DNA of 64,000 bases from the NCBI RefSeq assembly GCF_036365525.1, contig NC_090399.1, forward strand, positions 50,004,430-50,068,429, given 5' to 3'. The DNA is from Heterodontus francisci (taxonomy: Eukaryota). This document shows, piece by piece, positions 21,568 through 62,798 of this stretch. The translations under genes and the position numbers were made by a program. Numbering within the stretch: the first letter of the stretch is position 1; every line of letters begins with the position of its first letter. The notes under the pieces are model-generated. The model did not search any database, was not told where the DNA came from, and saw only the letters and a program-made list of their open reading frames with translations.

Positions 21568-21653
21568 CTAAACCTCTCCTGCGATTATTGCCAGCACAGC
21601 TAAGAGCCCCAGCACTGGGCCAGGACTAATAATCTCATTCGACCCTCCGGATT
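21568..21653 (-). CDS. Class I-like exon 5, connecting peptide plus hydrophobic segment ending in TAG (ESGGSNEIISPGPVLGLLAVLAIIAGEV*)
   Basis: Acceptor tttttacctggtgtgcag|AA. Phase-1 reading gives a linker plus hydrophobic stretch. The exon continues past the stop to a strong donor CAG|GTGAGT at 21529. Confidence 0.72.
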
Positions 21654-24600
21654 CTGCACACCAGGTAAAAACACATACAGCACATTAAGGGACATTAACA
21701 GTGAAGTACGAGAAGTTGAAGATAATAACCCACTTCGCCAGGAGTGTTTATGTCACTGACAATGGGGGCAACCCTCAGCTCACACACCCCAACCAGCACC
21801 CCCCTCCCCCCGCAACAGCATTCGACCCAACAATGGAGCAGCTACACTTTCAATTTTGGAATTGATAGGTTTTGGGTGACAACCAATGGGCCCCCGTTTT
21901 ACACCCGACCCCACATTTCTTTTCCATTGAGTGGGTAAAACAGAGCTACGGATTCACACTTGCCAGTTTCCGTGTTACTGCCCGAGGTCAGTTTCACCAC
22001 CCGAGAGCTTGAGAACGGCCCATCTTGGATTGTCCATCAGCGGCTGGTGAGATCCATTTTTAAGGAAAACCATTCCGCAGGATTTCTATAGGAAGTGGCT
22101 TTCGGTTGAATATTGTCAAGCATTGGCTAAAGATTGCCTGTATCCTATTGCAATGATATATCCAATGCAATCGAAGACCATGGACAGAATTTTTAACCAG
22201 ACCAACTCGTTGGCAGTGGATGATTGCCTGGGGGTGGTGGGTCAGGAATCCGCTTGTGAAAGAAGTGGGCTTTGCCGTGGCTGTTTATCTCAGCCGTGGC
22301 ATTAATATCGCGCCTCCGGGTTTCCCAACCAGTCACAGAGTACAGGCGTGGTGATGACCCGCAACCATCAATGGAAGGATTTCTATTTAAAGGGAGCACC
22401 CCCTCCCCACCCTGCTCAATTAGGGGTCTGAATGGCTGCATCTGAGCATCTGGTTCCTGAGGCTTCAGCAAGCACAAGAATGAAAGTGCAAGGTGGAAAT
22501 TCTGCTCCCCGGTTCTCTGACTCTTCCCTGGAGATCCTACCGTGGGCTGCAATGGCCTGCAGAGCAGTATTGTTTCCTGTGGCTGGAAGTGGCAGACACA
22601 GTAAGCAGTAGACTTTTACATCTTTCCTGAATTGGGGTGCCCAGAATTGGGCACGATACTCCAGCTGAGGCCTAGCCAGTAATTTATAAAGTTCCAGCAT
22701 GATCTCTTTGCTTTCGTATTCTTGTGCCTTTAATTATTAACCCAAATGCTCGTAAAACCACCTGATCAACTTGGCCTGCCCGTGTTTTGAAGGAATTATG
22801 TATAGGACACCAAGGTCACCAATACTTTTCAAAATCTACCCATTTACAGTTAAATGTCTTTCCACATCTGTCCTTCCAAAGTACATCACCTGACATGTCT
22901 CCACATTGAACTCCATCCACCAGATGTTTTTGAACATCTGTGAACTTTATAATGCTGCTCCCTACATCGTAGACAAAATCGTTTATAAAAACTGAAAAGA
23001 GCAATGGACTCAAAACTGACCCTCAGGAAACGTCAGCGTGTCTGAAAAACATCCACCCCCACGAACCTTCACTTCCTGTCACTGAGATATTTATGTATCC
23101 ATAACGCTGCTTCCCCCTTAATTCCATGGGCTTCCATCTTCTTAATAAGCCTCCTGCATGGCAGTTTGTCGAACGCTTTCTGAAAGTCCATATATATATA
23201 TATATATATATAATATCTACTGCACGACTTTCTCTGTTACCTCAAAGAATTCAGTCAAGTTAGACAGACAAGATTTATCTTTAACATTTCCGTGCTGTCT
23301 CTCCCTGAGTAAAACAAACCTTTCCAACTGAAAGGCTGAGGTCATGAACTCCCCGGTCTGCTGAGTGACTATTTGCCCCCCGACCTCACCGGCTGTACCT
23401 GAATCTGTTCATGTCTTTGTGGTTTAATTTCAGTCAGTCTCCAGCCCGGTGCTGGTCGAGTTCTATAGTTAGGCCTCTCCTCACTCTTCCATGTATTTTT
23501 CAAAACTCTCTTTCCCTCCATTTTACCTCTATCTCGTTGACTCATGACTAATAAAGGGTAAATAAGTTAAATCTGTTTCCAGTGGCAGAAGCATCAGTAA
23601 CTAGAGGACACAGATTTAATATAACTGCAGGGCTATGAGGAAAGAGAGAGGACAAGCAGGCCTATATTGAATAGTGCTTTAAAAGAACTGCACAGGCATG
23701 ATGCGCCAAATGTTGTCTTTTGTGCAGCATCATTGTATGATAACTTACCTGACCTCACTATCAGAGTCTTGGACAGGCTGCTGTGTTGAACCTGACAGGA
23801 GTAGTCATTTGCGCCAATGCCTTCAATGTTAATGAGGATTTCCATCCTGTATGTCGCATCATGGTTTGGTAAAACTGTCACACTAAGGTGGTCTGACACA
23901 GGTTCGTCATTCCTCAGCCAGGTGGCATTGATGGCACGTGGGTAGAAGGCAGTGATGAGGCACAAGAGGGTTCTGGGCACCCCACCAGTGAAGTTCCTTT
24001 GGAAAAGCAGCACCTGAGGAGCAACTGGGGAAGAACTGAGAATCAAATCACTATTTCTATAAACTCGATAACACATTCAGCAAAGAGAACCAGATCACAC
24101 TCAGTATCTGCATCCAAATCACACTCTGCATCTGGATCCAGATCACACTCAGTATCTGCATCCAAATCACACTCTGCATCTGGATCCAGATCACACTCAG
24201 TATCCAGATCCAGATCAGACTCAGCATCCCGATCCAGATCACACTCAGTATCCGGATCTAGATCACACTCTGCATCTGGATCCAGATCACACTCAGTATC
24301 CAGATCCAGATCAGACTCAGCATCCCGATCCAGATCACACTCAGTATCCAGATCCAGATCAGACTCAGCATCCCGATCCAGATCACACTCAGTATCCAGA
24401 TCCAGATCAGAATCAGCATCCGGATCCAGATCACACTCAGTATCCAGATCCAGATCAGACTCAGCATCCCGATCCAGATCACACTCAGTATCCAGATCCA
24501 GATCAGACTCAGCATCCGGATCCAGATCACACTCAGTATCCAGATCCAGATCAGACTCAGCATCCCGATCCAGATCACACTCAGTATCCAGATCCAGATC

Positions 24601-27600
24601 AGACTCAGCATCCGGATCCAGATCAGACTCAGTATCTGGATCCAGATCACACTCAGCATCTGGATCCAGATCACACTCTGCATCCGGATCCAGATCACAC
24701 TCAGTATCCGGATCTAGATCACACTCAGCATCCCGATCCAGATCACACTCTGCATCCGGATCCAGATCACACTCAGTATCTGCATCCAATTCACACTCTG
24801 CATCTGGATCCAGATCACACTCAGTATCCAGATCCAGATCACACTCAGCATCCCGATCCAGATCACACTCAGCATCCCGATCCAGATCACACTCAGGATC
24901 CGGATCTAGATCACACTCAGCATCTGCATCCAAATCACACTCTGCATCCGGATTCAGATCACACTCAGTATCCAGATCCAGATCACATTCTGCATCCAGA
25001 TCCAGATCACACTCAGCATCCCGATCCAGATCAGACTCAGTATCCGGATCCAGATCACACTCAGTATCCAGATCCAGATCACACTCAGTATCCGGATCCA
25101 GATCAGACTCAGTATCCGGATCCAGATCACACTCTGCATCCCGATCCAGAGCAGACTCAGTATCCAGATCCAGATCACACTCAGCATCCCGATCCAGATC
25201 ACACTCAGTATCCAGATCCAGATCACACTCAGTATCCGGATCCAGATCACACTCTGCATCCGGATCCAGATCACACTCAGCATCCTGATCCAGATCACAC
25301 TCAGTATCCGGATCCAGATCACACTCTGCATCCGGATCCAGATCAGACTCAGCATCCCGATCCAGATCAGACTCAGTATCCGGATCCAGATCAGACTCAG
25401 TATCTGGATCCAGATCAGACTCAGTATCCGGATCCAGATCACACTCTGCATCCAGATCCAGATCAGACTCAGTATCCCGATCCAGATCACACTCAGAATC
25501 CGGGTCCAGATCACACTCAGTATCCGGATCCAGATCACACTCAGCATCCCGATCCAGATCACACACATTATCCAGATCCAGATCACACTCTGCATCCGGA
25601 TCCAGATCACACTCAGCATCCTGATCCAGATCACACTCAGTATCCGGATCCAGATCACACTCAGTATCCAGATCCAGATCAGACTCAGTATCCAGATCCA
25701 GATCAGACTCAGTATCCGGATACAGATCACACTCAGTATCCGGATCCAGATCAGACTCAGTATCCAGATCCAGATCACACTCAGTATCCCGATCCAGATC
25801 ACACTCAGTATCCGGATCCAGATCACATTCAGTATCCGGATCCAGATCACACTCAGTATCCGGATCCAGATCAGAATCAGTATCTGGATCCAGATCACAC
25901 TCAGTATCCAGATCAGACTCAGTATCCGGATCCAGATCAGACTCAGTATCCGGATCCAGATCACACTCAGCATCCCGATCCAGATCACACTCAGTATCCG
26001 GATCCAGATCACACTCTGCATCCCGATCCAGATCACACTCTGCATCCGGATCCAGATCACACTCAGCATCCCGATCCACATCACACTCAGTATCCGGATC
26101 CAGATCACACTCAGCATCCCGATACAGATCACACTCAGTATCTGGATCCAGATCACACTCAGTATCCGGATCCAGATCACACTCTGCATCCGGATACATA
26201 TCACACTCAGAATCTGGATCCAGATCACACTCTGCATCCGGATACAGATCACACTCAGCATCCCGATCTAGATCACACTCAGTATCCAGATCCAGATCAG
26301 ACTCAGTATCCAGATCCAGATCACACTCTGCATCCGGATCCAGATCACACTCAGTAACCGGATCCAGATCAGACTCAGTATCCAGATCCAGATCACACTC
26401 AGCATCCCGATCCAGATCACACTCAGAATCCGGATCCAGATCACACTCTGCATCCGGATACAGATCACACTCAGCATCCCGATCCAGATCACACTCAGTA
26501 TCCGGATCCAGATCAGACTCAGTATCCGGATCCAGATCACACTCAGCATCCCGATCTAGATCACACTCAGTATCCAGATCCAGATCAGACTCAGTATCCA
26601 GATCCAGATCACACTCTGCATCCGGATCCAGATCACACTCAGTATCCGGATCCAGATCAGACTCAGTATCCAGATCCAGATCACACTCAGCATCCCGATC
26701 CAGATCACACTCAGTATCCAGATCCAGATCACACTCTGCATCCGGATCCAGATCACACTCAGCATCCAGATCCAGATCACACTCAGTATCTGGATCCAGA
26801 TCACACTCAGTATCCAGATCCAGATCACACTCAGCATCCCGATCCAGATCACACTCAGTATCCAGATCCAGATCACACTCTGCATCCGGATCCAGATCAC
26901 ACTCAGCATCCCGATCCAGATCACACTCAGTATCCGGATCCAGATCACACTCAGCATCCCGATCCAGATCACACTCAGTATCCGGATCCAGATCAGACTC
27001 AGTATCCGGATCCAGATCACACTCAGCATCCCGATCCAGATCACACTCAGTATCCAGATCCAGATCACACTCTGCATCCGGATCCAGATCACACTCAGCA
27101 TCCCGATCCAGATCACACTCAGTATCCGGATCCAGATCACACTCAGCATCCCGATCCAGATCACACTCAGTATCCGGATCCAGATCACACTCAGTATCCG
27201 GATCCAGATCACACTCAGCATCCCGATCCAGATCACACTCAGTATCCGGATCCCGATCACACTCAGTATCTGGATCCAGATCACACTCTGCATCCGGATC
27301 CAGATCACACTCTGCATCCCGATCCAGATCACACTCAGTATCCGGATCCAGATCACACTCAGTATCCGGATTCAGATCACACTCAGCATCCAGATTCAGA
27401 TCACACTCAGCATCCTGATCCAGATCACACTCAGTATCCCGAACCAGATCACACTCAGTATCCGGATCCAGATCACACTCAGTATCCGGATTCAGATCAC
27501 ACTCAGCATCCCGATCCAGATCACACTCAGTATCCGGATCCAGATCACACTCTGCATCCCGATCCTGATCACACTCAGTATCCGGATCCATATCACACTC

Positions 27601-30600
27601 AGTATCCGGATCCAGATCACACTCTGCATCCCGATCCTGATCACACTCAGTATCCAGATCCAGATCAGACTCAGTATCCAGATCCAGATCACACTCAGCA
27701 TCCTGATCCATATCACACTCAGTATCCAGATCCAGATCACACTCAGTATCCGGATCCAGATCACACTCTGCATCCGGATCCAGATCAGACTCAGTATTCG
27801 GATCCAGATCACACTCAGTATCCGGATCCAGATCAGACTCAGTATCCGGATCCAGATCACACTCTGCATCCGGATCCAGATCACACTCTGCATCCGGATA
27901 CATATCACACTCAGCATCCCAATCCAGATCAGACTCAGTATCCAGATCCAGATCACACTCAGCATCCCGATCCAGATCACACTCAGTATCCGGATCCAGA
28001 TCATACTCTGCATCCGGATACAGATCACACTCAGTATCCGGATCCAGATCAGACTCAGTATCCAGATCCAGATCACACTCAGCATCCCGATCCAGATCAG
28101 ACTCAGTATCCGGATCCAGATCACACTCAGCATCCCGATTCAGATCAGGCTCAGTATCCAGATCCAGATCACACTCAGTATCCGGATCCAGATCACACTC
28201 TGCATCCGGATCCAGATCAGACTCAGTATCCGGATCCAGATCACACTCTGCATCCCGATCCAGATCAGACTCAGTATCCAGATCCAGATCACACTCAGCA
28301 TCCAGATCCAGATCACACTCAGTATCTGGATCCAGATCAGACTCAGTATCCGGATACAGATCACACTCAGCATCCCGATCCAAATCACACTCAGTATCCC
28401 GATTCAGATCAGGCTCAGTATCCAGATCCAGATCACACTCAGTATCCGGATCCAGATCACACTCTGCATCCGGATCCAGATCAGACTCAGTATCCGGATC
28501 CAGATCAAACTCTGCATCCGGATCCAGATCAGACTCAGCATCCCGATCCAGATCAGACTCAGCATCCAGATCCAGATCACACTCAGTATCTGGATCCAGA
28601 TCACACTCAGTATCCGGATCCAGATCACACTCAGCATCCCGATCCAGATCACACTCAGCATCCAGATCCAAATCACACTCAGTATCCGGATCCAGATCAC
28701 ACTCAGTATCTGGATCCAGATCACACTCAGTATCCGGATCCAGATCACACTCTGCATCCGGATCCAGATCACACTCAGCATCCCGATCCAGATCACACTC
28801 AGCATCCGGATCCAGATCACACTCATTATCCGGATCCAGATCACACTCAGTATCTGGATCCAGATCACACTCTGCATCCTGATCCAGATCAGACTCAGTA
28901 TCCAGATCCAGATCAGACTCAGTATCCGGATCCAGATCACACTCTGCATCCCGATCCAGATCACACTCAGCATCCAGATCCAGATCAGACTCAGTATCCG
29001 GATCCAGATCACACTCTGCATCCTGATCCAGATCAGACTCAGTATCCAGATCCAGATCAGACTCAGTATCCGGATCCAGATCACACTCTGCATCCTGATC
29101 CAGATCAGACTCAGTATCCAGATCCAGATCAGACTCAGTATCCGGATCCAGATCATACTCTGCATCCTGATACAGATCACACTCAGCATCTGGATCCAGA
29201 TCACACTCAGCACCTGGATCCAGATCACACTCTACACCCTGGTCCAGATCACACTCAGCATCCGGATCCAGATCACACTCAATATCCGGATCCAGATCAC
29301 ACTCTGCATCCTGATCCAGATCAGACTCAGTATCCAGATCCAGATCAGACTCAGTATCCGGATCCGGATCACACTCTGCATCCGGATACAGATCACACTC
29401 AGCACCTGGATCCAGATCACACTCTGCACCCTGGTCCAGATCACACTCAGCATCTGGATCCAGATCACACTCAGCACCTGGATCCAGATCACACTCTGCA
29501 CCCTGGTCCAGATCACACTCAGCATCCGGATCCAGATCACACTCAGCATCTGGATCCAGATCACACTCAGCACCTGGATCCAGATCACACTCTACACCCT
29601 GGTCCAGATCACACTCAGCATCCGGATCCAGATCACACTCAATATCCGGATACAGATCACACTCTGCATCCGCATCCGGATCACACTAAGTATCCGGATA
29701 CAGATCACACTCAGTATCCGGATCCAGATCACACTCTGCACCTTGATCCATATCACACTCAGCATCCCGATCCAGATCACACTCTGCATCTGGATCCAGA
29801 TCACACTCAGTATCCCGATCCAGATCACACTCTGCATCCGGATCCAGATCACACTCTGTATCCGGATCCAGATCACATTCTGCATCCAGATCCAGATCAC
29901 ACTCAGCATCCCGATCCAGATCACACTCAGTATCCAGATCCAGATCACACTCAGCATCCCGATCCAGATCACACTCAGCATCCGGATCCAGATCACACTC
30001 AGTATCCGGATCCAGGTCACACTCTGCATCCGGATCCATATCACACTCAGCATCCCGATCCAGATCAGACTCAGTATCCGGATCCAGGTCACACTCTGCA
30101 TCCGGATCCAGATCACACTCTGCATCCGGATCCAGATCACACTCAGCATCCCGATCCAGATCAGACTCAGTATCCAGATCCAGATCACACTCAGCATCCC
30201 GATTCAGATCAGGCTCAGTATCCAGATCCAGATCACACTCAGTATCTGGATCCAGATCACACTCTGCATCCGGATCCAGATCAGACTCAGTATCCGGATC
30301 CAGATCACACTCAGCATCCCGATCCAGATCAGGCTCAGTATCCAGATCCAGATCACACTCAGTATCCGGATCCAGATCATACTCTGCATCCAGATCCAGA
30401 TCAGACTCAGTATCCAGATCCAGATCAGACTCAGCATCCGGATCCAGATCACACTCTGCATCTGGATCCAGATCACACTCAGTATCCGGATCCAGATCAC
30501 ACTCAGTAACCGGGTCCAGATCACACTCAGCATCTGGATCCAGATCACACTCAGTGTCCGGATCCAGATCACACTCAGTATCCGGATCCAGATCAGACTC

Positions 30601-33600
30601 AGTATCCAGATCCAGATCAGACTCAGTATCCGGATCCAGATCACACTCTGCATCCTGATCCAGATCAGACTCAGTATCCAGATCCAGATCACTCTCTGCA
30701 TCCCGATCCAGATCAGGCTCAGTATCCAGATCCAGATCACACTCAGTATCCGGATCCAGATAACACTCTGCATCCGGATCCAGATCAGACTCAGTATCTG
30801 GATCCAGATCACACTCAGCATCTGGATCCAGATCACACTCTGCATCCGGATCCAGATCACACTCAGTATCCGGATCCAGATCACACTCTGCATCCGGATC
30901 CAGATCACACTCTGCATCCGGATTCAGATCACACTCAGTATCCAGATCCAGATCACACAGTATCCGGATCCAGATCACACTCAGCATCTGGATCCAGATC
31001 ACACTCAGCACCTGGATCCAGATCACACTCTGCACCCTGGTCCAGATCACACTCAGCATCCGGATCCAGATCACACTCAATATCCGGATCCAGATCACAC
31101 TCTGCATCCGGATCCGGATCACACTCAGTATCCGGATCCAGAACACACTCTGCATCCGGATACAGATCACACTCAGCATCTGGATCCAGATCACACTCAG
31201 CACCTGGATCCAGATCACACTCTACACCCTGGTCCAGATCACACTCAGCATCCGGATCCAGATCACACTCAATATCCGGATACAGATCACACTCTGCATC
31301 CGCATCCGGATCACACTAAGTATCCGGATACAGATCACACTCAGTATCCGGATCCAGATCACACTCTGCACCTTGATCCATATCACACTCAGCATCCCGA
31401 TCCAGATCACACTCAGTATCCCGATCCAGATCACACTCTGCATCCGGATCCAGATCACACTCTGTATCCGGATCCAGATCACATTCTGCATCCAGATCCA
31501 GATCACACTCAGCATCCCGATCCAGATCACACTCAGTATCCAGATCCAGATCACACTCAGCATCCCGATCCAGATCACACTCAGCATCCGGATCCAGATC
31601 ACACTCAGTATCCGGATCCAGGTCACACTCTGCATCCGGATCCAGATCACACTCAGCATCCCGATCCAGATCAGGCTCAGTATCCAGATCCAGATCACAC
31701 TCAGTATCCGGATCCAGATCACACTCTGCATCCGGATCCAGATCAGACTCAGTATCCAGATCACACTCAGCATCCCGATTCAGATCAGGCTCAGTATCCA
31801 GATCCAGATCACACTCAGTATCCGGATCCAGATCACACTCTGCATCCGGATCCAGATCAGACTCAGTATCCGGATCCAGATCACACTCTGCATCCCGATC
31901 CAGATCAGACTCAGTATCCAGATCCAGATCACACTCAGCATCCCGATCCAGATCAGGCTCAGTATCCAGATCCAGATCACACTCAGTATCCGGATCCAGA
32001 TCACACTCAGCATCTGGATCCAGATCACACTCTGCATCCAGATCCAGATCAGACTCAGTATCCGGATCCAGATCAGACTCAGTATCCGGATCCAGATCAC
32101 ACTCTGCATCTGGATCCAGATCACACTCAGTATCCGGATCCAGATCACACTCAGTAACCGGATCCAGATCACACTCAGCATCTGGATCCAGATCACACTC
32201 AGTGTCCGGATTCAGATCACACTCAGTATCCGGATCCAGATCGCACTCTGCATCCAGATCCAGATCAGACTCAGTATCCGGATCAAGATCACACTCTGCA
32301 TCCCGATCCAGATCAGACTCAGTATCCAGATCCAGATCACACTCAGCATCCCGATCCAGATCAGGCTCAGTATCCAGATCCAGATCAGACTCAGTATCCA
32401 GATCCAGATCACACTCTGCATCCGGATCCAGATCACACTCAGTATCCGGATCCAGATCAGACTCAGTATCCAGATCCAGATCAGACTCAGTATCCAGATC
32501 CAGATCACTCTCTGCATCCCGATCCAGATCAGGCTCAGTATCCAGATCCAGATCACACTCAGCATCCCGATCCAGATCAGGCTCAGTATCCAGATCCAGA
32601 TCAGACTCAGTATCCAGATCCAGATCACACTCTGCATCCGGATCCAGATCACACTCAGTATCCGGATCCAGATCAGACTCAGTATCCCGATCCAGATCAC
32701 ACTCAGTATCCAGATCCAGATCACACTCAGCATCCCGATCCAGATCAGACTCAGTATCCAGATCCAGATCACTCTCTGCATCCCGATCCAGATCAGGCTC
32801 AGTATCCAGATCCAGATCACACTCAGTATCCGGATCCAGATAACACTCTGCATCCGGATCCAGATCAGACTCAGTATCTGGATCCAGATCACACTCAGCA
32901 TCTGGATCCAGATCACACTCTGCATCCGGATCCAGATCACACTCAGTATCCGGATCCAGATCACACTCTGCATCCGGATCCAGATCAGACTCAGTATCTG
33001 GATCCAGATCACACTCAGCATCTGGATCCAGATCACACTCTGCATCCGGATCCAGATCACACTCAGTATCCGGATCCAGATCACACTCTGCATCCGGATC
33101 CAGATCACACTCTGCATCCGGATTCAGATCACACTCAGTATCCGGATCCAGATCACACTCAGCATCTGGATCCAGATCACACTCAGCACCTGGATCCAGA
33201 TCACACTCTGCACCCTGGTCCAGATCACACTCAGCATCCGGATCCAGATCACACTCAATATCCGGATCCAGATCACACTCTGCATCCGGATCCGGATCAC
33301 ACTCAGTATCCGGATCCAGAACACACTCTGCATCCGGATACAGATCACACTCAGCATCTGGATCCAGATCACACTCTGCATCCGGATCCAGATCACACTC
33401 TGCATCCGGATCCAGATCACACTCTGCATCCGGATTCAGATCACACTCAGTATCCGGATCCAGATCACACTCAGCATCTGGATCCAGATCACACTCAGCA
33501 CCTGGATCCAGATCACACTCTGCACCCTGGTCCAGATCACACTCAGCATCCGGATCCAGATCACACTCAATATCCGGATACAGATCACACTCTGCATCCG

Positions 33601-36600: not shown

Positions 36601-39600
36601 CTCTGCACCAGGATCTTGATCACACTCTGCACCCGGATCCCAGTCACACCCTGCACCAGGATCCCAGTCACACTCTGCACCAGGTCCTGATCACACTCTG
36701 CACCCGGATCCCAGTCACACCCTGCACCCGGATCACAGTCACACTCTGCACCCGGATCCCAGTCACACTCTGCACCAGGATCCCAGTCACACTCTGCACC
36801 AGGATCCTGATCACACTCTGCACCTGGATTCTAATCACACTCTGCACCTGGATCCAGATCACAATCTGCACCTGGATGCTGATCACACTCGGCACCCAAA
36901 TCCCAGTCACACTCTGCACCCGGATCCAGATCACACTCTGCACCTGGATCCAGATCACACTCTGCACCTGGATCCCAGTCATGCTCTGCACCCGGATCCC
37001 AGTCACACTCTGCACCTGGATCCCAGTCACACTCTGCAACAAGATCCCAGTCACACTCTGCATCCGGATCCAGATCACACTCTGCACCTGGATCCAGATC
37101 ACACTCTGCACCTGGATCCCAGTCATGCTCTGCACCTGGATCTCAGTCACACTCTGCATCCGGATCCCAGTCACTGTCTGCACCCGGTTCCAGATCACAC
37201 TCTGCACCCGTATCCCGATCACACTCTGCACACGGATCCCAGTCACTGTCTGCACCCGGTTCCAGATCACACTCTGCACCCGTATCCTGATCACACTCTG
37301 CACATGGATCCCAGTCACACTCTGCACCCGGATCCAGATCACACTCTGCACCTGGATCCCAGTCATGCTCTGCACCTGGATCTCAGTCACACTCTGCATC
37401 CGGATCCCAGTCACTGTCTGCACCCGGTTCCAGATCACACTCTGCACCCGTATCCTGATCACACTCTGCACATGGATCCCAGTCACACTCTGCACCCGGA
37501 TCCAGATCACACACTGCACCTGGATCCAGATCACACACTGCACCTGGATCCAGATCACACTCTGCACCTGGATGAGGATCACACTCTGCACCTGGATCCC
37601 AGTCACTCTCTGCACCCGGATCCCGATCACACTCTGCACCCGGATCCAGATCACACACTGCACCTGGATTCAGATCACACTCTGCACCTGGATGAGGATC
37701 ACACTCTGCACCTGGATCCCAGTCACTGTCTGCACCTGGATCCCGATCACACTCTGCACCTGGATGAGGATCACACTCTGCACCTGGATCCCAATCACAC
37801 TCTGCACCCGGATCCCAGTCACTGTCTGCACCCGGTTCCAGATCACACTCTGCACCCGTATCCCGATCACACTCTGCACACGGATCCCAGTCACACTCTG
37901 CACCTGGATCCCGATCACACTCTGCACCCGGATCCAGATCACACACTGCACCTGGATCCAGATCACACTCTGCACCTGGATGAGGATCACACTCTGCACC
38001 TGGATCCCAGTCACTCTCTGCACCCGGATCCCGATCACACTCTGCACCCGGATCCAGATCACACACTGCACCTGGATTCAGATCACACTCTGCACCTGGA
38101 TCCCGATCACACTCTGTACCCGGATCCCGATCACACTCTGCACCCGGATCCCGATCACACTCTGCACCCGGATCCCAATCACACTCTGCACCCGGATCCC
38201 AATCACACTCTGCACCCGGATCCCAGTCACACATTGCACCTGGATTCCAGTCACACTCAGCACCCGGATCCCAGTCACACTCTGCACCCGGATCCCGATC
38301 ACACTCTGCACCTAGATCCCAGTCACACTCTGCACCTAGATCCCAGTCACACTCTGCACCTGGATCCTGATCACACTCTTCCCCATGGGTCCAGATCACA
38401 CTTTGCACCTGGATACCAGTCACACTCTGCACCTGAATCCCCATCACCCTCTACACCTGGATCCTGATCACACTTTGCACCCGGATCCCAATCACAGTCT
38501 GCACCTGGATCCAGATCACACTCTGCACCTGGATCCCAGTCACCGTCTACACCCAGATTCTGATCATACTTTACACCTGGATCCCAATCACAGTCTGCAC
38601 CTGAATCCAGATCACACTCTGCACCTGGATCCCAATCACACTCTACACCCAGATCTAGATCACACCCTGCGCCCGGATCCAGATCACACTCTGCACCTGG
38701 ATCCCAGTCACCCACTACACCCGGATCCAGATCACATTCTGCACCCGGATCCCGATCACACTTTGCACCTGGATCCCAATCACACTCTACACCCGGATCC
38801 CGATCACACTCAGCACCTGGATGCAGATCACATTCCGTATGTAAATGATGGTTTTCCACTTGCCTTTTCTTTCCAGAGCTGCTTTACCAGCTGCAAGGGT
38901 TTTCTGCAGATTTTGAATACAGCCTTCGCGCAGTGACTTGATAAAAGTGATATCGGTGGTTAGCATTTGTTGAAATTCATTCTGCAGCATGCTAAAAATG
39001 CCTTCTGCCTTGCAATGCATGGTGGCCGTGTCACATTCAATCTCTCCAAGCATGCCAGTGTATATCTTTACAAAGCCGATGGTGCTGTTGTTGTTGTATT
39101 GTGTGCAGCTCCAGAGTCCCTGAAGGTATGTCACAGCTGGAAATGATCAACAGGTCGAGCAGGCATTATTGTCAGAACTCTCCAATCCCCTCGCCATTGA
39201 ATAGCGTCTCTGATACCCGAGTGAGTAAATGTACCGTCCGCAGAGGTACAGAGAAGGAAGACCCGACAAGAGACTGTGGTGAGTGACTCTACTCTTGCTC
39301 TAGTTTCTCTCTTGTCTCCCCTCATGCCCTCTCCAAGTTCGTCTTTTCCATGGGATGCACATCCAGCTCCCTCGACCCCATTCCCACTGAACTGCTGGTC
39401 ACCCAACTTCCCATTGTGTTGTGTGTCCAGTACTTTAGGAAGGATGTGAAGGTATTGGAGGGGTACGGAAAGGTGCGAGAATGTTTCTGGGTGATGAGGG
39501 AATTCTGTTACGTGGATAGATTGGAGAAGCTGGGCCTGTGCTTTATAGAGAAGAGAAGGTTGTCAGGAGATTTGACAGCAGTGTTCAAAATCACGAGGGG

Positions 39601-42600
39601 TCGAGACAGAGTAGATAGAGAGAAACTGTTCCCAGGGTCCGGAACCAGAGGACATCGATTTAAAGCGAATGACAAAAGAACCAGAGGGGACATGAGGAAA
39701 ACGATTTTTACACAGTAAGTGGTTAGAATCTGGAATGCACTGCCTGAGAGTGTGGTGGAGGTAGGTTCAATCAAGGCCTTCAAAACTGAATTGGATAGTT
39801 ATCTGAAGATAAAAGATTTGCACGGATACAGGGGAAAGGCAGCGCAGTAGAAGTAGCTGTGTTTCTCTTGCAGCGAGCTGGCACAGACACGACGGGTCGA
39901 ATGACCTCCTTCTGTGCTGCTAGCCATTCTATGATTCACTGATTCTATTCTCTTCCTGGGTCCCATGTTACCTGACATTAATGATTCTCCCTCCTCAGAG
40001 GAGTTCTGTCCCTCTCTGCTTCAAATCTGCTCTCATCATTCGTCTCCTTAAAAAAACCAACCCTTGACCCCCACCATCCTTGCAAGCTCCCTTTCTTCTC
40101 CATACTTCTTGAATGCGTTGCCACCTCCCAAATCCGTGCCCATATTTCCTGGAACTCCATGGTTGAATCCCTCCAATCATGTTTCCGCCCCCTGCCACAG
40201 TACCGAAATGGCTCTTATCGAAGTCATAAATGACATCCTATGTGATTGTGACAAAGGTAAACTTTCCCTCCTCGTCCTTCTCGACCTGTCTGCAACCTTT
40301 GACACGGTTGACCACACCATCCTCCTCCAACGCCTCTGCACTGTTGTCCAGTTGAATGGGACTGCCCTCACCTGGTTCCATTCTTCTGTAGTTAATCATA
40401 CCCAGAGTATCACTTGCAATGGCTTCTCTTTCTGCTCCTGCACTGTTATCTCTAGTTTCCCCCAAAGATCTATCCTTGGCCCCCTCTTATTTCTCATCTA
40501 CCTGCTGCCCCTCAGTAACATCATCCAAAAGTGCAGTATTAGTTTTCACATGTGCACTGACGACACCCAGCTTTACCTCACCACCGCCTCTCTCGACTCC
40601 TCCGCTGTTGCTAAATTATCAGACTGCTTATCTGACATCCAGTACTGGATAAACAGAAATTTCCTCCAATTTAATATTGGGAAGACTGAAACCATTGTCT
40701 TAGTGCCCTCAAACACGGTTCCCTAGTTACCAACTCCATCTCTCTCTCTCTCTCTCTCTCTCTAGCTCAAACTAAAACAGACTGTTGACAACCTTCGTGT
40801 CACATTTGACCCCAAGATGAGTTTCCAATCACATATTTGCACCATTACTGAGACTGCCTATTTCCACCTCCATCACATCTCCTGCTTGCCCCCTGCCTCA
40901 TCTCCTCTGCTGGTGAAACCCTCCTGCCTTTATTAACTCCTGGCCAGTCTCCCATATTCTAGTCTCCATTAACTTGAGCCCTTTCAGAACTCTGCTGCCT
41001 ATTCCTTAACTCGCACCAAGTCCCATTCACCTATCACCATGTACTCACTGACTTACATGGACTTCCTGTCAAGCAACGTTTTGATTTTAAAATTCTCATC
41101 CGTGTTTTCAAATTCCTCCAAGGCCTCACCTCTCCCTATCTCTGGAATCTCCTCCAGGCCTACAACCCTCTGAGATATCTGCACTTCTCTAATTCTGGCC
41201 TCTTGTGCATCCCCGATTTTAATCACTCCACCATTGCTGGCTGTACCTTCAGCTACTGAGGCCTTAAGAGCTGGAAATCCCTCCCGAAACCTCTCCACCT
41301 CACTCACACACTTTACTCCTTTAAGAGCTCCTTAAGACCTACCTCTTTGACCAAGCTTTTGGGCATTTAACCTAATGTCTCCTTAGGTGGTCGGGGGCAC
41401 ATTTTGTTTGGTTACTCTCGTTTAAAGGACTTTGGGACATTTTATTATGTTAAAGGCACAATATATTGTTATTATCTTTTTGTCCTTGTAATTCTGTAAC
41501 TGGAGAGGTGAAGAACCTATTCTCGATGTCTCTTGTGAGCAATAATTCCCACTAAGAAACCTTTGATATGATTGACACATTGGCATCTACCCAGCATGCA
41601 GTTCGGCTTTAACCTACAAGGGCAACAGAGGTCAAATGAAACGCACCAAGCAATCCGAGGAATGGAGCGACCTTACTGGAGAGAAGCTGTTGAAGAGCGT
41701 TTGCAGTCTTAGTCTGCTGCACCCAGTAGTCATCTGTAAAATTGTCGACCATCCATAGCTGCCTGGGCACGCTCTTCTTGAGGTTGCTGTCGTAGTACTG
41801 GGTCTGCAGGTCATCCAGCATCCTGACCACAGAGAGCTCTGGCAGGCCAAGGAGAGGGGTGCTGTAGATGTAGCGAGACATCAAAGTGTGGGAGCCTGAG
41901 GGAAAGTTGCAGAGAAGGATTGTGAATGTGGGAGGGGCCCAAACCTGCAGATTGTGAACCACCTTTGACCTCTAGCCTCCAGGAGAAGGAGCAGGACATA
42001 GAACATAGGAAATAGGAGCAGGAGTAGACCAAACGGCCCATCGAGTCAGCTCCGCCATTCAATAAGATCATGGCTGACCCTTGACTTCAATTCCACTTTC
42101 CCACCCGCTCCCCATATTCTTGATTTCCCGAGCGACCAAAAAATCTGTCTGTCTCAGCTCTAAATATATTCAACGATGGAGCATCCACCACCCTCTGGGG
42201 TAGAGAATGCCAAAGGTTCACAACCCTCTGAGTGAAGACATTTCTCCTCCTCCCAGTTCCAAGTGATCACCCCATTATCCTGAGACTCTGCCCTCGTCTT
42301 CCAGATTCCCCAGGCAGGAACAACAACCTCTCAGTGTCAACCCCTTCAGAATCTTGTATGATTCAATGAGATTACCTCTCATTCTTCTGAACTCCAGCGA
42401 GTACAGACCCAATTTGCTCAGCCACTCATCAGAGGACAACCCTCTCATTCCCAGGGACCAACCTAGTGAACCTTCACTGCACCGTCTCTAAGACGAGTAT
42501 GCCCTTCCTTAGGCATGGAGACCAAAACCATAAATAGGGCTCCAGGTGTGGTCTCACCAAAGTCCCGTATAATTGCCGCAAGGCTTCCTTATTCTTGTTC

Positions 42601-48600: not shown

Positions 48601-50741
48601 CATTTGCAACAATCTTCAGCCAGAAGAACCGAGTGGATGATCCATCTCGGCCTACTCCTGAAGTCCCCCAGCAGCACAGATGCCAAACTTCAGCCAGTTC
48701 AATACACTCCACCTGATAACAGGAAATGCTGAATGCACTGGATACTGCAAAGGCTATGGGCCCTGACAATATTCCAGCAATAGTACTGAGACCTGTGCCC
48801 CAGAATGGGCTGCGCCCCTAGCCAAGCTGTTCCAGTTCAGCTACAACACTGGCATCTACCCAGCAATCTGGAAAATGGCCCAGGTCTGTCCTGGCATCTT
48901 GATCATCAATAAAGTGATGGAAGGTGGTGTCGACAGTGCCATCAAGTGGCACTTACAGAGCAATAACTTACTCACTGATGTTCAGTTTGGGTTTCACCAT
49001 GGCCACTCCTGATTTCATTAAAGCCTTGGTCCAAACATTAACAAAAGAGCTGAACTCAAGAGGTGAGGTGAGAGTGACTCCCCTTGACATCAAGTCAGCA
49101 TTTGACCGAGTATGACATCAAGGAGCCCTAGCAAAACTGACGTCAATGGGAATCAGGGGGAAAATTCTCCACTGGTTGGAGTCATACCTAGCACAAAGGA
49201 AGATGGTTGTGGTTGTTAGAGGTCAATCATCTCAGCCCCAGGACATCACTGCAGGGGTTCCTCATGGTAGTGTCCAAGGCCCAACCATCTTCAGCTGCTT
49301 CATCAATGACCTTCCTTCAGTCAGAAGGTCAGAAGTGGGGATGTTCGCTGATGATTGCACAATGTTCAGCACCATTCATGACTCCTCAGATACTGAAGCA
49401 GTCCGTGTCGAAATGCAGCAAGACCTGGACAATATCCAGGCTTGGGTTGATAAGTGGAAAGTACCATTCGTGCCTGGCACTTGTGCGGCACATGACCATG
49501 GCATCTCCAACAAGAGATGATCTAGCCATCTCCCCTCAACATTCAGTGGTATTACCATCGCTGAATCCCCCACTATCAGCATCCTAGGGGCTACCATTGA
49601 CCAGAGAGTGAACTGGAGTAACCATATAAATACCATGGCTACAACAGCAGGTCAGAGGCTAGGAATCCTGAGGCGGGTAACTCACCTATTGACTCCCCAA
49701 AGCCTGTCCACCATCTGCAAGGCACAAGTCAGGAGTGTGATGGAATACTCTCCACTTGCCTGGATGGGTGCAGCTCCAACAACACTCAAGAAGCTTGGCA
49801 CCATCCAGCACAAAACAGCCCACTTGATTGGCACCCCATCTACAACATTCACTCCCTCCACCACTGACGCACAGTGGCAGCAGTGTGTACCATCTACAAG
49901 ATGTACTGCAGCAACTCACCAAGGCTCCTTCGACAACACCTTCCAAACCCGCCACCTCTACCACCTCGAAGGACAAGGGCATCAGATGCATGGGAACACC
50001 ACCACCTTCAATTTCCCCTCCAAGCCACACACCGTCCTGACTTGGAACTATGTCACCGTTCCTTCTCTGGTTAAAATCCAGGACCTCCCTTCCTAACAGC
50101 ACTGTGGGTGTACCTACCCCACATGGAATGCAGCGGTTCAAGAAGGCAGCTCACCACCACCTTCTCGAGGGTAATTAGGGATGGGTAATAAATGTTGGCC
50201 TTGCCAGTGATGCCCACATCATATGAAAGAATAAAAAAAGTACTGACCCTCTGACTGTGCAACACTCCCTTGGTACTGACCCTTTGACGTGCAGCACTCC
50301 ATCTGTACTGACCCTCTGACCATGCAGCACTCCCTCAGTACTGACCCTCTGACAGTGCAGCACTCCTTCAGTACTGACCCTCTGACAGTGCAGTATTCCT
50401 TCGGTACTGGATTCACTGCTGGAGTTGGCTTGAATTCTCAGCCTTCTGACTCATGGACAAGAATGCTCGGCTCTGAGCCAGGTCTGGCCAGGATCCAAGA
50501 GCTTGCTGCTGCCTGTATTGTAAGGTGATAGTGTGTGGAGTAAATCTCCAGCTTGCCACCCAGCCCACACTGCCCCAGGCTATTTGACTGGCACCATAGG
50601 TCAGTGCCCCTTCTCCATATCATCTGATTGTCATTCACTCCCCCAGAAATCCCTTACCTTACCTGCACAGACTGCCAGAGCAGAGCAGAGAGACAGCACG
50701 ATGAAGTGAAAGCCTGCAGTGTGTCTGTTCCGACCAGCCAT
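21568..50741 (-). CDS. Nonclassical MHC class I-like heavy chain gene, spliced model join(50741-50663, 41895-41647, 39136-38864, 24024-23749, 21653-21568), ~320 aa
   Basis: Five exons in canonical class I order (leader, a1, a2, a3 C1-set Ig, TM-like). All junctions are phase 1 and join in frame (G|GC=Gly, G|CT=Ala, G|TT=Val, G|AA=Glu); lengths 79+249+273+276+86=963 nt. Motifs: GSHTL, LPE, YYDS, PRQxW, YW; LQxxxxC...C..L..L..G; FYP, W, LPNxDxTY, YSCQVQH. Confidence 0.88.
22590..23330 (-). mobile_element. CR1 LINE RT/3' fragments, with a (TA)n microsatellite at ~23190-23212
   Basis: ORF remnants LARPQLEY..QFWAP and PLLFSVFIND..IKFTD. Confidence 0.75.
23749..24024 (-). CDS. Class I-like exon 4, alpha3 C1-set Ig domain (VAPQVLL...LLCLITAFYPRAINATW...VLPNHDATY...YSCQVQHSSL)
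   Basis: Acceptor ttcttccccag|TT, donor CAG|GTAAGT, 276 nt; full MHC C1-set signature (CxxxxFYP, W, LPNxDxTY, YxCxVxH). Confidence 0.95.
24090..38833 (+). repeat. 24-bp minisatellite (CCAGATCACACTCAGTATCCGGAT), ~14.7 kb, ~600 units, filling the alpha2-alpha3 intron
   Basis: Direct reading; 8-aa periodic ORFs (DLDPDTEC, SRSHSVSG). The variant CCCAGTCACACTCTGCACCTGGAT dominates from ~36100 on. Identical sub-blocks at 31780, 34006 and 34960. Confidence 0.98.
38864..39136 (-). CDS. Class I-like exon 3, alpha2 domain (AVTYLQGLWSC...LREGCIQNLQKTLAAGKAALERK)
   Basis: Acceptor catttccag|CT; 273 nt; canonical C101/C164-equivalent cysteines, LQ (Q96), C-terminal L..G..LER pattern. Ends at a GC donor AAG|GCAAGT. 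Confidence 0.85.
39290..41460 (+). mobile_element. L2-clade LINE remnant (RT to 3' end), interrupted by a CR1 3' fragment at ~39415-39945
   Basis: LDPIPTELL, STEMAL, LLDLSATFDTVDHTILL, SILGPLLF and TDDTQLY motifs; nested CR1 tail RLEKLGL..RRLSGDL..TRGH. Confidence 0.85.
41647..41895 (-). CDS. Class I-like exon 2, alpha1 domain (GSHTLMSRYIYSTPLLGLPELSVVRMLDDLQTQYYDSNLKKSVPRQLWMVDNFTDDYWVQQTKTANALQQLLSSKVAPFLGLL)
   Basis: Acceptor tttccctcag|GC; GSH start, GLPE, LDD, YYDS, PRQxW and YW are class I alpha1 motifs. The 3' end is uncertain: best donor TTG|GTGCGT at 41647, with in-frame alternatives at 41677 and 41614. Confidence 0.88.
41995..42620 (-). mobile_element. CR1 LINE 3' fragment
   Basis: LVRPHLEP..FWSP.LRK; CR1 tail CATAGAACATAGGAAATAGGAGCAGGAG read on the plus strand. 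Confidence 0.75.
43335..44430 (-). mobile_element. CR1 LINE RT-3' segment
   Basis: LGPLLFLIYINDL, KFVDDTKL, DLGVYVH, RRLRGDLI, RGHRFK motifs. Confidence 0.88.
44431..44930. mobile_element. Penelope-like element terminal fragment
   Basis: AAAATACTGCGGATGCTGGAAATCTGAAATAAAAAC...GAGTTAACGTTTCGGGTC; related copies at 48245-48330 (inverted) and 54105-54295. Confidence 0.6.
44933..45468. repeat. Near-identical duplicate of the class I-like proximal upstream region (50832-51366)
   Basis: Direct comparison at offset ~5899; only scattered substitutions. Confidence 0.92.
45545..50238 (+). mobile_element. CR1-group LINE (APE fragment 45545-46090; RT and 3' end 48330-50238), split by an LTR element
   Basis: WVGDFNVHH; LDIKSAFDRV, GVPHGSVQGP, FINDL, FADDCT; 3' end GAATAAAAAAA. 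Confidence 0.85.
46094..48240 (+). mobile_element. Gypsy-like LTR retrotransposon remnant: LTR 46094-46985, tRNA-Pro-like PBS ~46989, decayed gag/protease
   Basis: LTR termini TGTTATG...CATAACA (7-bp inverted), internal AATAAA, PBS TGGGGG; coiled-coil gag ORF 47118-47495 and LLLGNDL motif. Confidence 0.75.
50240..50480 (-). mobile_element. Deu-SINE 5' part with ~5 tandem copies of the 33-bp unit
   Basis: AGTACTGACCCTCTGACAGTGCAGCACTCCCTC repeats next to an inverted tRNA-like head. Confidence 0.7.
50663..50741 (-). CDS. Class I-like exon 1, signal peptide MAGRNRHTAGFHFIVLSLCSALAVCA
   Basis: ATG in strong Kozak context (AGGATGG), basic n-region, hydrophobic core, small residues before the cleavage site, donor G|GTAAG in phase 1. 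Splices to give mature N-terminus GSHTL. Confidence 0.8.
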
Positions 50742-57026: not shown

Positions 57027-57077
57027 CTGTAGGTTCAGAACAAGGGCCATGGAAAGGCCAGAAGCAAGACACTAGGA

Positions 57078-59305: not shown

Positions 59306-59344
59306 GGGACGCAGTTGTGGCGTGTGGGTGGCGGTTGCACCCAA

Positions 59345-62654: not shown

Positions 62655-62798
62655 CATTCTTTAAACACCAGCCCAGTCCGGAGTTCTTTCCATTTTTATA
62701 CTTGTACAAAACAGCAGCAACAGCACCGATGAAGCAAAGCAAGACAATCACCAAAACGATAGAGACAATTATCCCCGTTTTCGAACCATTGCGTTCAT
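62655..62798 (-). CDS. Transmembrane exon of a second type I membrane protein gene whose 5' part lies beyond the window (DERNGSKTGIIVSIVLVIVLLCFIGAVAAVLYKYKNGKNSGLGWCLKN)
   Basis: Acceptor ttcttgttcactcag|AT, donor ATG|GTAAGA, 144 nt phase 1-1; ~23-aa hydrophobic segment followed by basic stop-transfer YKYK. Confidence 0.8.

What the first reader, a model, noticed from the sequence alone, without database searches (positions are those of the whole stretch)
21568..50741. Intact but highly divergent nonclassical MHC class I gene hidden in repeats, candidate new or poorly known shark lineage
Seen: four ectodomain exons splice in frame with no stops over 27 kb of repeat-filled introns, and alpha3 is a textbook class I C1 domain. 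Established: classical class I molecules keep Y7, Y59, Y/R84, T143, K146, W147, Y159 and Y171 to anchor peptide ends. My by-eye alignment to HLA numbering gives S7, Y59, L84, L/Q143, E146, F147, S159 and T171, so about 1 of 8 is kept. W167 is N, the alpha2 YDG motif is absent and the N86 glycan site is lost. Beta2m-contact features (Q96, the alpha3 LPN proline) and H3/D29 remain. Inference: a beta2m-associated nonclassical molecule that does not present conventional peptides. I cannot tell by eye whether it belongs to a described cartilaginous-fish lineage (UBA, UCA, UDA, UEA, UFA) or is new.
Basis: partly seen in the sequence, partly recalled or inferred. Interest (0 to 1): 0.9.

Follow-up and report, generated by a model that had tools for sequence, protein, structure and literature searches.

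The report
Horn shark UFA nonclassical MHC gene
This is a real, intact and transcribed nonclassical MHC class I gene, but it is the horn shark copy of UFA, a shark lineage that is already described and has a solved crystal structure, so it is not a new lineage.

Summary
On the minus strand, five coding exons (50741-50663, 41895-41647, 39136-38864, 24024-23749, 21653-21568) splice in frame into 320 codons. The product is identical to RefSeq XP_067865432.1 of Heterodontus francisci. Assembled RNA contigs from four runs of one sample carry the exon 1-2, 2-3 and 3-4 junctions. The exon 3-4 junction uses a GC donor and spans a 14.8-kb intron that is almost entirely one 24-bp minisatellite.

The suggestion of a new lineage fails. 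Each ectodomain exon has its best solved-structure match in PDB 8GM8, titled "shark nonclassical MHC class I, UFA". The alpha2 exon matches nothing else in the PDB. It matches only three related proteins among 1.84 billion cluster representatives. Twenty-three elasmobranch relatives give a gene tree that follows the species tree, so this is the 1:1 orthologue of nurse shark UFA.

The literature describes UFA as CD1-like and lipid-binding.

Every full-length member ends directly after a short hydrophobic stretch, with no cytoplasmic tail, which resembles a GPI-attachment signal. That reading is untested.

Verdict: already known, low novelty.

The parts
50663..50741 (-). Exon 1, coding part: ATG and signal peptide (MAGRNRHTAGFHFIVLSLCSALAVCA, then the first base of the G codon). 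The 5' UTR extends further upstream by at least about 220-330 nt, judged from contig lengths.
   Evidence: Sequence. The loose end at 41898 in RNA contigs matches the end of exon 1. Identical to P0027 residues 1-26.
41647..41895 (-). Exon 2, alpha1 domain (83 codons), long-donor form (isoform X1).
   Evidence: Pfam MHC_I E 2.2e-6. Best PDB hit 8gm8 at E 1.5e-19. Contigs of four runs cover 41647-41898 with 0 mismatches.
41677..41677 (-). Last exon base before the alternative GT donor used by RefSeq isoform X2 (310 aa). That isoform removes the last 10 residues of alpha1.
   Evidence: P0008 compared with P0027. No contig with this junction appeared, but contigs drop rare variants.
38864..39136 (-). 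Exon 3, alpha2 domain (91 codons). It holds the canonical Cys pair plus an extra lineage-specific Cys pair. It ends at a GC donor.
   Evidence: The only meaningful PDB hit is 8gm8, E 4.7e-20. Only 3 related proteins were found among 1.84 billion representatives. RNA contigs join 39136 to 41647.
24090..38832 (.). 24-bp minisatellite of about 615 copies that makes up about 99% of intron 3 (38863-24025).
   Evidence: Tandem Repeats Finder. The intron is removed in RNA: the loose end at 38864 equals the start of exon 4.
23749..24024 (-). Exon 4, alpha3 domain (Ig C1-set).
   Evidence: Pfam C1-set E 7.9e-14. 8gm8 at E 2.4e-32.
21568..21653 (-). Exon 5, coding part: connecting peptide (ESGGSNE), then a short hydrophobic C-terminus (IISPGPVLGLLAVLAIIAGEV), then TAG. 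There is no cytoplasmic tail.
   Evidence: Identical to the C-terminus of P0027. The same tail-less ending occurs in 20 of 20 full-length relatives.

Best explanation
The stretch holds the horn shark (Heterodontus francisci) orthologue of UFA. [quoted passage not shown]

Shown here:
- The gene is intact.
- It is transcribed and spliced as modelled, across a GC-AG intron that is almost entirely minisatellite.
- It encodes a class I heavy chain with a signal peptide, alpha1, alpha2, a C1-set alpha3 and a short hydrophobic C-terminus.

Inferred from orthology, from the loss of 7 of 8 peptide-end anchors, from hydrophobic replacements along both helices, and from what the literature reports for UFA:
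- It pairs with beta2-microglobulin.
- It holds a hydrophobic, non-peptide ligand (lipid) in a CD1-like manner for recognition by lymphocytes.

Inferred from the conserved C-terminal architecture only:
- It sits in the membrane by a GPI anchor or a tail-less anchor, so it cannot use CD1-type cytoplasmic sorting motifs.
For: Identity:
- The exon translations are 100% identical to horn shark RefSeq proteins.
- P0027 (XP_067865432.1) equals the five-exon model.

Lineage:
- Per-exon PDB searches give 8gm8 as top hit at E 1.5e-19, 4.7e-20 and 2.4e-32.
- The lineage profile scores 419 bits against 8gm8. It scores 177 for 9ch4 (UGA), 148 for MR1, 111 for CD1 and 111 for nurse shark classical UAA.
- Entry titles name 8gm8 as UFA and 9ch4 as UGA.
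- The predicted model (pLDDT 71.9) matches 8gm8 best: Foldseek E 1.9e-29; VIA-align Z 24.0 over 257 residues.
- The tree splits sharks from rays at 100/100, and the horn shark is sister to the other galeomorphs at 97/98.

Expression:
- Contigs of 0.7-1.6 kb in four runs join exons 2 and 3 exactly.
- Their loose ends match exon 1 and exon 4.

Function:
- UFA is described as very similar to CD1 in its binding region and as mapping in the class Ib cluster with UDA and UEA (PMC10751288).
- Crystal structure and mass spectrometry are said to suggest lipids like those bound by human CD1d (PMC12562908, a personal communication cited there).
- Only Y59 of the eight anchors is kept.

Tail:
-.
Against: - No ligand, beta2-microglobulin pairing or membrane-anchor data exist for the horn shark protein.
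- The lipid claim rests on a review's personal communication and an 'unpublished data' remark. I could not find the primary UFA paper in the library.
- Identity to nurse shark UFA is only 49% in alpha1 and 45% in alpha2, so the ligand may differ between species. For example, Y7 is kept in nurse shark and rays but is S in horn shark.
- MHC linkage of this window was not verified. The only hints are unchecked scan notes of other class I-like genes on the same piece, megabases away.
- All RNA evidence comes from one sample, and its library type is a guess.
Confidence: 0.85

Rival explanations
1. It is the UFA orthologue, but it does not present lipids. It either binds another small hydrophobic or non-peptide ligand, or has a ligand-independent role, as FcRn, HFE or ZAG do.
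For: - Alpha1 and alpha2 evolve fast: 45-49% identity to nurse shark UFA.
- FcRn and chicken YF1*7.1 structures score within about 3-4 Z units of UFA.
- Zinc-alpha-2-glycoprotein scores as high as MR1 in the profile search.
- The lipid claim for UFA is second-hand.
Against: - The literature states CD1-like groove features and lipid content for UFA.
- Both helices carry many hydrophobic residues at groove-facing positions (by-eye mapping).
- The gene has been conserved as one copy per shark species across more than 250 million years.
Confidence: 0.2
2. It belongs to a new, undescribed cartilaginous-fish class I lineage.
For: - Pfam MHC_I is only borderline, and the alpha2 exon has no Pfam hit.
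- RefSeq gives only a generic 'MR1-like' name.
Against: - All three domains match UFA (8GM8) far better than anything else.
- The gene tree is congruent with the species tree and includes nurse shark UFA.
Confidence: 0.02
3. It is a decaying or silent pseudogene whose open frame is a leftover.
For: - The introns are huge and repeat-filled.
- One donor is non-canonical (GC).
- The stop falls right after the hydrophobic segment, and another frame stays open to a GT downstream.
Against: - The 320-codon frame is intact.
- Spliced contigs at depths of 150-850 occur in four runs.
- The early stop and tail-less end are conserved in all full-length relatives.
- Structural residues (Cys pairs, the C1-set core) are conserved.
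Confidence: 0.03
4. It is a conventional peptide-presenting class I molecule with unusual anchors.
For: It has a class I fold. Y59, H3, Q96 and the alpha2 disulfide are kept.
Against: - Seven of eight peptide-end anchors are replaced.
- None of T143, K146, W147, Y84 or Y171 is kept anywhere in the lineage.
- The alpha1 helix is about 4 residues shorter than in classical molecules.
Confidence: 0.03

Closest known systems
UFA of nurse shark (Ginglymostoma cirratum), PDB 8GM8
   Same: - Best match of every ectodomain exon.
- Same domain order and same extra Cys pair in alpha2.
- Same loss of the C-terminal peptide anchors.
- Orthologous by tree.
- Best structural match of the predicted model.
   Different: - Only 49%, 45% and 63% identity in alpha1, alpha2 and alpha3.
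- Horn shark has S where nurse shark and rays keep Y7.
- The crystallised chain lacks the C-terminal anchor, so it says nothing about the tail.
UGA of sharks, PDB 9CH4
   Same: - Second-best hit for alpha1 (E 1.8e-11) and for the lineage profile at 177 bits.
- Also reported as a CD1-like class Ib molecule.
   Different: - The alpha2 exon shows no detectable similarity to it, even at E up to 10.
- 28-29% identity in the structural alignment.
- A separate lineage.
CD1 of tetrapods
   Same: The literature reports a CD1-like groove and lipid content for UFA. Both are nonclassical and low-copy.
   Different: - By sequence, CD1 is no closer than classical class I: 111 bits against 148 for MR1.
- The CD1-type Pfam domain PF16497 has no hit in the horn shark protein and a sub-threshold hit in nurse shark UFA.
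- There is no cytoplasmic tail, so no CD1-type tyrosine sorting motif.
- The resemblance is one of function; family membership by sequence is not shown.
MR1 (the name RefSeq gives it)
   Same: Class I fold, with moderate alpha1 similarity at E about 4e-6.
   Different: - The alpha2 exon has no detectable similarity to MR1.
- The profile score is far below that for UFA.
- The automatic name is only a nearest-mammal label.
Chicken YF1*7.1 (lipid and lipopeptide-binding class I)
   Same: Next-best structural matches after UFA, at Z 21.1-21.3. It is a nonclassical molecule with a hydrophobic groove.
   Different: Its Z values are tied within 1 with many classical and FcRn structures, and identity is 24%. 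There is no evidence of a special relationship.

Membership tests
UFA lineage (elasmobranch MHC-Ib) | All three ectodomains are most similar to the reference UFA (nurse shark, 8GM8). | tested here: met
   Searches give E 1.5e-19, 4.7e-20 and 2.4e-32. The profile scores 419 bits against 177 for the next hit.
UFA lineage (elasmobranch MHC-Ib) | Falls in one clade with reference UFA, with a gene tree that follows the species tree (orthology). | tested here: met
   sharks and rays split at 100/100, and the horn shark is sister to the other galeomorphs at 97/98. Caveat: no other class I lineage could be fetched as an outgroup.
UFA lineage (elasmobranch MHC-Ib) | Single or low copy in sharks. | tested here: inconclusive
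   The searches returned one horn shark protein cluster with two isoforms of one gene. The genome itself was not scanned.
UFA lineage (elasmobranch MHC-Ib) | Maps in the MHC class Ib cluster with UDA and UEA, between brd2/b2m and hsd17b8/rxrb (PMC10751288). | not testable with these tools
The only hints are unchecked scan notes of class I-like genes on the same piece, 2-17 Mb away.
UFA lineage (elasmobranch MHC-Ib) | Hydrophobic, CD1-like groove that holds lipid. | not testable with these tools
   Only indirect evidence exists: anchor loss, hydrophobic helix residues by eye, and literature statements.
Classical MHC class I (Ia) | Eight conserved peptide-end anchors: Y7, Y59, Y/R84, T143, K146, W147, Y159, Y171. 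| tested here: not met
   The horn shark keeps only Y59 (plus landmark alignment). The lineage keeps Y7 in some species but never keeps 84, 143, 146, 147 or 171.
MHC class I superfamily | An alpha1-alpha2 platform with the alpha2 disulfide, plus a C1-set alpha3. | tested here: met
   C1-set at E 1e-12. MHC_I at 27.4 bits, just below the 28.3 cut-off. The predicted fold has two helices over a sheet plus an Ig domain. All top structural matches are class I-type chains.
CD1 family | Sequence membership in the CD1-type alpha1-alpha2 domain (Pfam PF16497), and a cytoplasmic YXXZ sorting motif in most isoforms. | tested here: not met
   The horn shark protein has no PF16497 hit. CD1 chains rank below MR1 and classical chains. 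There is no cytoplasmic tail.
GPI-anchored proteins | C-terminal signal: small residues at the attachment site, a short polar spacer, then 12-20 hydrophobic residues ending the protein. | tested here: inconclusive
   The pattern is present in 20 of 20 full-length members. The horn shark reads SGGS, then NEIISPGP, then VLGLLAVLAIIAGEV. No GPI predictor or experiment was available, and a tail-less transmembrane anchor fits as well.

The most novel reading that the evidence does not exclude
UFA molecules, this one included, may be GPI-anchored, or at least entirely tail-less. Every full-length shark and ray member ends in a cluster of small residues, a short spacer and 14-17 hydrophobic residues, with no cytoplasmic residues at all. 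A lipid-presenting class I molecule of this kind could not use the tyrosine-based endosomal sorting that tetrapod CD1 depends on. It would have to load its ligand in the secretory pathway, at the surface or through raft recycling. I could not find the primary UFA paper, so I do not know whether this has already been described.
Probability: 0.4. Interest if true: 0.4.

Novelty: already known. Interest (0 to 1): 0.2.

Why it matters
UFA, with UGA, is the evidence that CD1-like lipid presentation may be as old as jawed vertebrates. A well-documented orthologue from a basal galeomorph shark therefore has modest comparative value.
- It shows which groove positions vary. For example, Y7 is S here.
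- It shows that an extra alpha2 cysteine pair and a tail-less, GPI-signal-like C-terminus are conserved across the lineage.
- It corrects an automatic 'MR1-like' name.
- It shows that a 14.8-kb intron that is 99% minisatellite, with a GC donor, is still spliced correctly.

It does not reveal a new lineage or a new mechanism.

Tried and rejected
- **Joined model:** I did not build or search a joined spliced model. Each exon was searched by reference. Full-length work used the public protein P0027, which the tools returned and which equals the model.
- **Outgroups for a wider tree:** I tried to fetch UAA, UBA, UDA, UEA and UGA sequences. Region-restricted searches with alpha1 and alpha3 of P0027 returned only UFA-lineage proteins. 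No outgroup could be added, so separate alpha1/alpha2 and alpha3 trees against other lineages were not made.
- **Primary UFA paper:** five literature searches found none. A search for 9CH4 returned only unrelated chemistry hits.
- **Earlier scan notes:** there were none for this place, and none mention UFA, CD1 or brd2.
- **Frameshift in exon 5:** I considered this because another frame stays open to a downstream GT. I rejected it because the early stop is conserved in all relatives.
- **Shorter alpha1 donor (41677) as the main form:** rejected. Relatives align through the longer form, and all RNA contigs use 41647.
- **GT donor 24 nt upstream of the GC donor in exon 3:** rejected. RNA contigs and relatives keep the GKAALERK end.
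- **dN/dS:** not done, because no orthologous coding DNA was available.
Full report
**What is there.**
The gene lies on the minus strand. Reading the sequence gives five coding exons.
- Exon 1: 50741-50663. It holds the ATG and the signal peptide and ends at a GT donor.
- Exon 2: 41895-41647, alpha1.
- Exon 3: 39136-38864, alpha2. Its donor is GC, in the context G|GCAAGT.
- Exon 4: 24024-23749, alpha3.
- Exon 5: 21653-21568. It holds the connecting peptide and a hydrophobic end, then TAG.

All junctions are phase 1. The sum is 963 nt, or 320 codons plus the stop. The window contains no N.

I never built or sent a joined sequence. Full-length comparisons used a public protein that the tools returned.

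**Is it a class I gene?**
Pfam gives C1-set for the alpha3 exon (E 7.9e-14). It gives a borderline MHC_I match for alpha1 (27.8 bits against a cut-off of 28.3) and nothing for alpha2.

A model predicted from a 23-sequence alignment has a mean pLDDT of 71.9. It shows two long helices over a sheet, followed by an Ig domain. All of its top structural matches are class I-type heavy chains.

**Which gene and which species.**
The alpha2 and alpha3 exon translations are 100% identical to P0008. The alpha1 exon is identical to P0008 up to the point where P0008 uses a shorter donor.

The cluster look-up names two proteins of Heterodontus francisci:
- XP_067865433.1 (isoform X2, 310 aa);
- XP_067865432.1 (P0027, isoform X1, 320 aa).

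Both carry the name [quoted passage not shown]. P0027 reads exactly as the five exons in order. So the window is horn shark, and the gene is already in RefSeq under a generic name.

**Which lineage.**
Each ectodomain exon, searched alone against all PDB chain sequences, has 8gm8_A as its best hit:
- alpha1: E 1.5e-19;
- alpha2: E 4.7e-20;
- alpha3: E 2.4e-32.

The alpha2 exon has no other meaningful PDB hit, even at E up to 10. Against 1.84 billion cluster representatives it finds only three related proteins. A fourth hit is a low-complexity repeat protein.

A full-length relative used as query returned 25 proteins, all from sharks and rays. They come from:
- sharks: Cetorhinus, Carcharodon, Mustelus, Pristiophorus, Heterodontus, Chiloscyllium, Scyliorhinus, Heptranchias and Ginglymostoma;
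- rays: Pristis, Hemitrygon, Amblyraja, Mobula and Narcine.

The nurse shark entry (P0012, 265 aa) is the 8GM8 chain. The fold search prints the entry titles:
- 8GM8: "Crystal structure of shark nonclassical MHC CLASS I, UFA", released 2024-11-27;
- 9CH4: "... UGA", released 2026-03-18.

A profile of the 23 relatives gives these scores:

| PDB target | Bits |
|---|---|
| 8gm8 (UFA) | 419 |
| 9ch4 (UGA) | 177 |
| 6a2b (a class I chain) | 156 |
| MR1 | 148 |
| CD1 | 111 |
| nurse shark classical UAA (6lup) | 111 |

A maximum-likelihood tree of the 23 proteins follows the species tree.
- Sharks split from rays at 100/100.
- Pristiophorus and Heptranchias sit at the base of the sharks.
- The horn shark is sister to the remaining galeomorphs at 97/98.
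- Nurse shark UFA pairs with Chiloscyllium at 100/100.

With one sequence per shark species, this is the pattern of 1:1 orthology. The caveat is that I could not fetch other named lineages as outgroups.

**Is it expressed?**
One sample (four runs, library type guessed as RNA) holds all sampled words of exon 3.

Laid on 38800-42300, each run has one contig of 727-1648 nt. Each contig covers exon 3 (38864-39136) and exon 2 (41647-41898) with no mismatch. Each joins 39136 to 41647, skipping 2510 nt with GT..AG ends on the gene's strand.
- The loose end at 38864 is the reverse complement of the first bases of exon 4. So the GC donor is used and the 14.8-kb intron is removed.
- The loose end at 41898 matches the end of exon 1.
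- The contig lengths fit a full mRNA with untranslated ends.

This rules out a silent pseudogene. It also shows that the long alpha1 donor (isoform X1) is the assembled form. No contig carried the X2 junction, but contigs drop rare variants.

I used conserved landmarks (H3, the DD motif, PRxxW, YW, Q96, C101, C164, the GK near the end of alpha2) and the lineage alignment. HLA numbering is from my own knowledge.

| HLA position | Horn shark | Across the lineage |
|---|---|---|
| 7 | S | Y in nurse shark, Chiloscyllium and all rays; H, Q or N in other sharks |
| 59 | Y | Y in 21 of 23 |
| 84 | L | never Y or R... R in two sharks, never Y |
| 159 | S | not Y |
| 167 | N | mixed |
| 171 | T | not Y |
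| 143 / 146 / 147 | Q / F / Q | none is T, K or W |

The alpha1 helix is about four residues shorter than in HLA. The N86 sequon and the YDG motif are absent. H3, Q96 and the alpha3 LPN are kept. So the by-eye count of about 1 of 8 anchors is right.

Groove-facing helix positions are mostly hydrophobic by this mapping. Examples are A65, L68, L71, L72, F79 and L82 in alpha1, and L134, F138, M141, L142, F148 and L152 in alpha2 (mature numbering). This mapping is an inference.

**What it most likely does.**
[quoted passage not shown] It cites unpublished data for this. It also says UFA maps in the class Ib cluster with UDA and UEA.

PMC12562908 reports, as a personal communication, that crystal structure and mass spectrometry suggest UFA and UGA bind lipids comparable to those of human CD1d.

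By orthology, the horn shark protein most likely presents a lipid or other hydrophobic ligand. This step is inferred. I could not find the primary paper.

By sequence, the lineage is not a CD1 family member. CD1 chains rank below MR1 and classical chains, and the CD1-type Pfam domain is not hit.

**Lineage features seen here.**
1. An extra cysteine pair in alpha2 (C144 and C151 of P0027) is present in 21 of 23 sequences. It is lost as a pair in the other two. The model places the two residues on neighbouring strands. This suggests a second alpha2 disulfide.
2. All 20 full-length members end right after a cluster of small residues, a short spacer and 14-17 hydrophobic residues, with no cytoplasmic residues. 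The horn shark reads SGGS-NEIISPGP-VLGLLAVLAIIAGEV. This is the architecture of a GPI-attachment signal, though a tail-less membrane anchor fits as well. Either way, the CD1-type cytoplasmic sorting motif is absent.
3. Only the alpha3 sequon NAT is conserved, in 21 of 23.

**Gene architecture.**

| Intron | Length (bp) |
|---|---|
| 1 | 8767 |
| 2 | 2510 |
| 3 | 14839 |
| 4 | 2095 |

Intron 3 is one 24-bp minisatellite from 24090 to 38832, about 615 copies. Only 31 and 65 unique bases remain next to the donor and the acceptor. It has a GC donor, yet it is spliced.

**Surroundings.**
The rest of the window is satellites and retroelement remains. There is also one exon-like open frame at 62655-62798 on the same strand. 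It has an AG acceptor, a GT donor and a transmembrane-like sequence.

Unchecked scan notes list other class I-like genes on the same piece, 2.2, 7.2-7.7 and 16.6 Mb away.

**Verdict.**
But the gene is the horn shark UFA: a described lineage with a solved structure, and an annotated RefSeq gene. Novelty is low.

The points worth keeping are the tail-less, GPI-signal-like end, the extra cysteine pair, the variable position 7 and the minisatellite intron.

Noticed in passing
window 24025-38863 (intron 3; array 24090-38832): An intron of 14,839 bp is about 99% one 24-bp minisatellite of about 615 copies at 86% match. Only 31 and 65 unique bases flank the GC donor and the AG acceptor. RNA contigs show that it is still removed correctly. 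On the gene's strand the array also reads as a 1542-aa mechanical ORF.
   Followed up: partly
window 62655-62798, minus strand: An exon-like frame with an AG acceptor and a GT donor, phase 1 to phase 1 (144 nt). It encodes a connecting-peptide/transmembrane/basic stretch (…ERNGSKTGIIVSIVLVIVLLCFIGAVAAVLYKYKNGKNSG…). It may be the membrane exon of a neighbouring gene upstream on the same strand, possibly another class I-type gene whose other exons lie beyond the window.
   Followed up: no
window 1-14211 and 57068-62272: Large satellite arrays flank the gene: a 27-bp unit (1-7062, 262 copies), a 44/23-bp unit (7061-14211), a 25-bp unit (57068-59304) and a 33-bp unit (59345-62272). With intron 3, tandem arrays make up more than half of the 64-kb window.
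   Followed up: no
window 41677 (alternative donor of exon 2): RefSeq isoform X2 uses a GT donor 30 nt upstream of the main one. This deletes the last 10 residues of the alpha1 helix. None of the four runs' contigs shows this junction.
   Followed up: partly
window 14507-16740 (+), 40064-40726 (+), 49146-50096 (+), 19867-20364 (-): There are retroelement remains: reverse-transcriptase-like ORFs downstream of the gene and inside introns 1 and 2, and a gag-like ORF at 19867-20364.
   Followed up: no
runs X5-X11 (organism B): Runs of a second organism, from two studies, hold about 22% of the sampled words of the alpha2 exon. This is presumably a close relative with its own UFA copy.
   Followed up: no
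alignment A1 (rays: Mobula, Hemitrygon, Pristis): UFA-lineage genes are single per shark species, but several occur per ray species: five in Mobula birostris, three in Hemitrygon akajei and two in Pristis pectinata. They form two ray sub-clades.
   Followed up: partly
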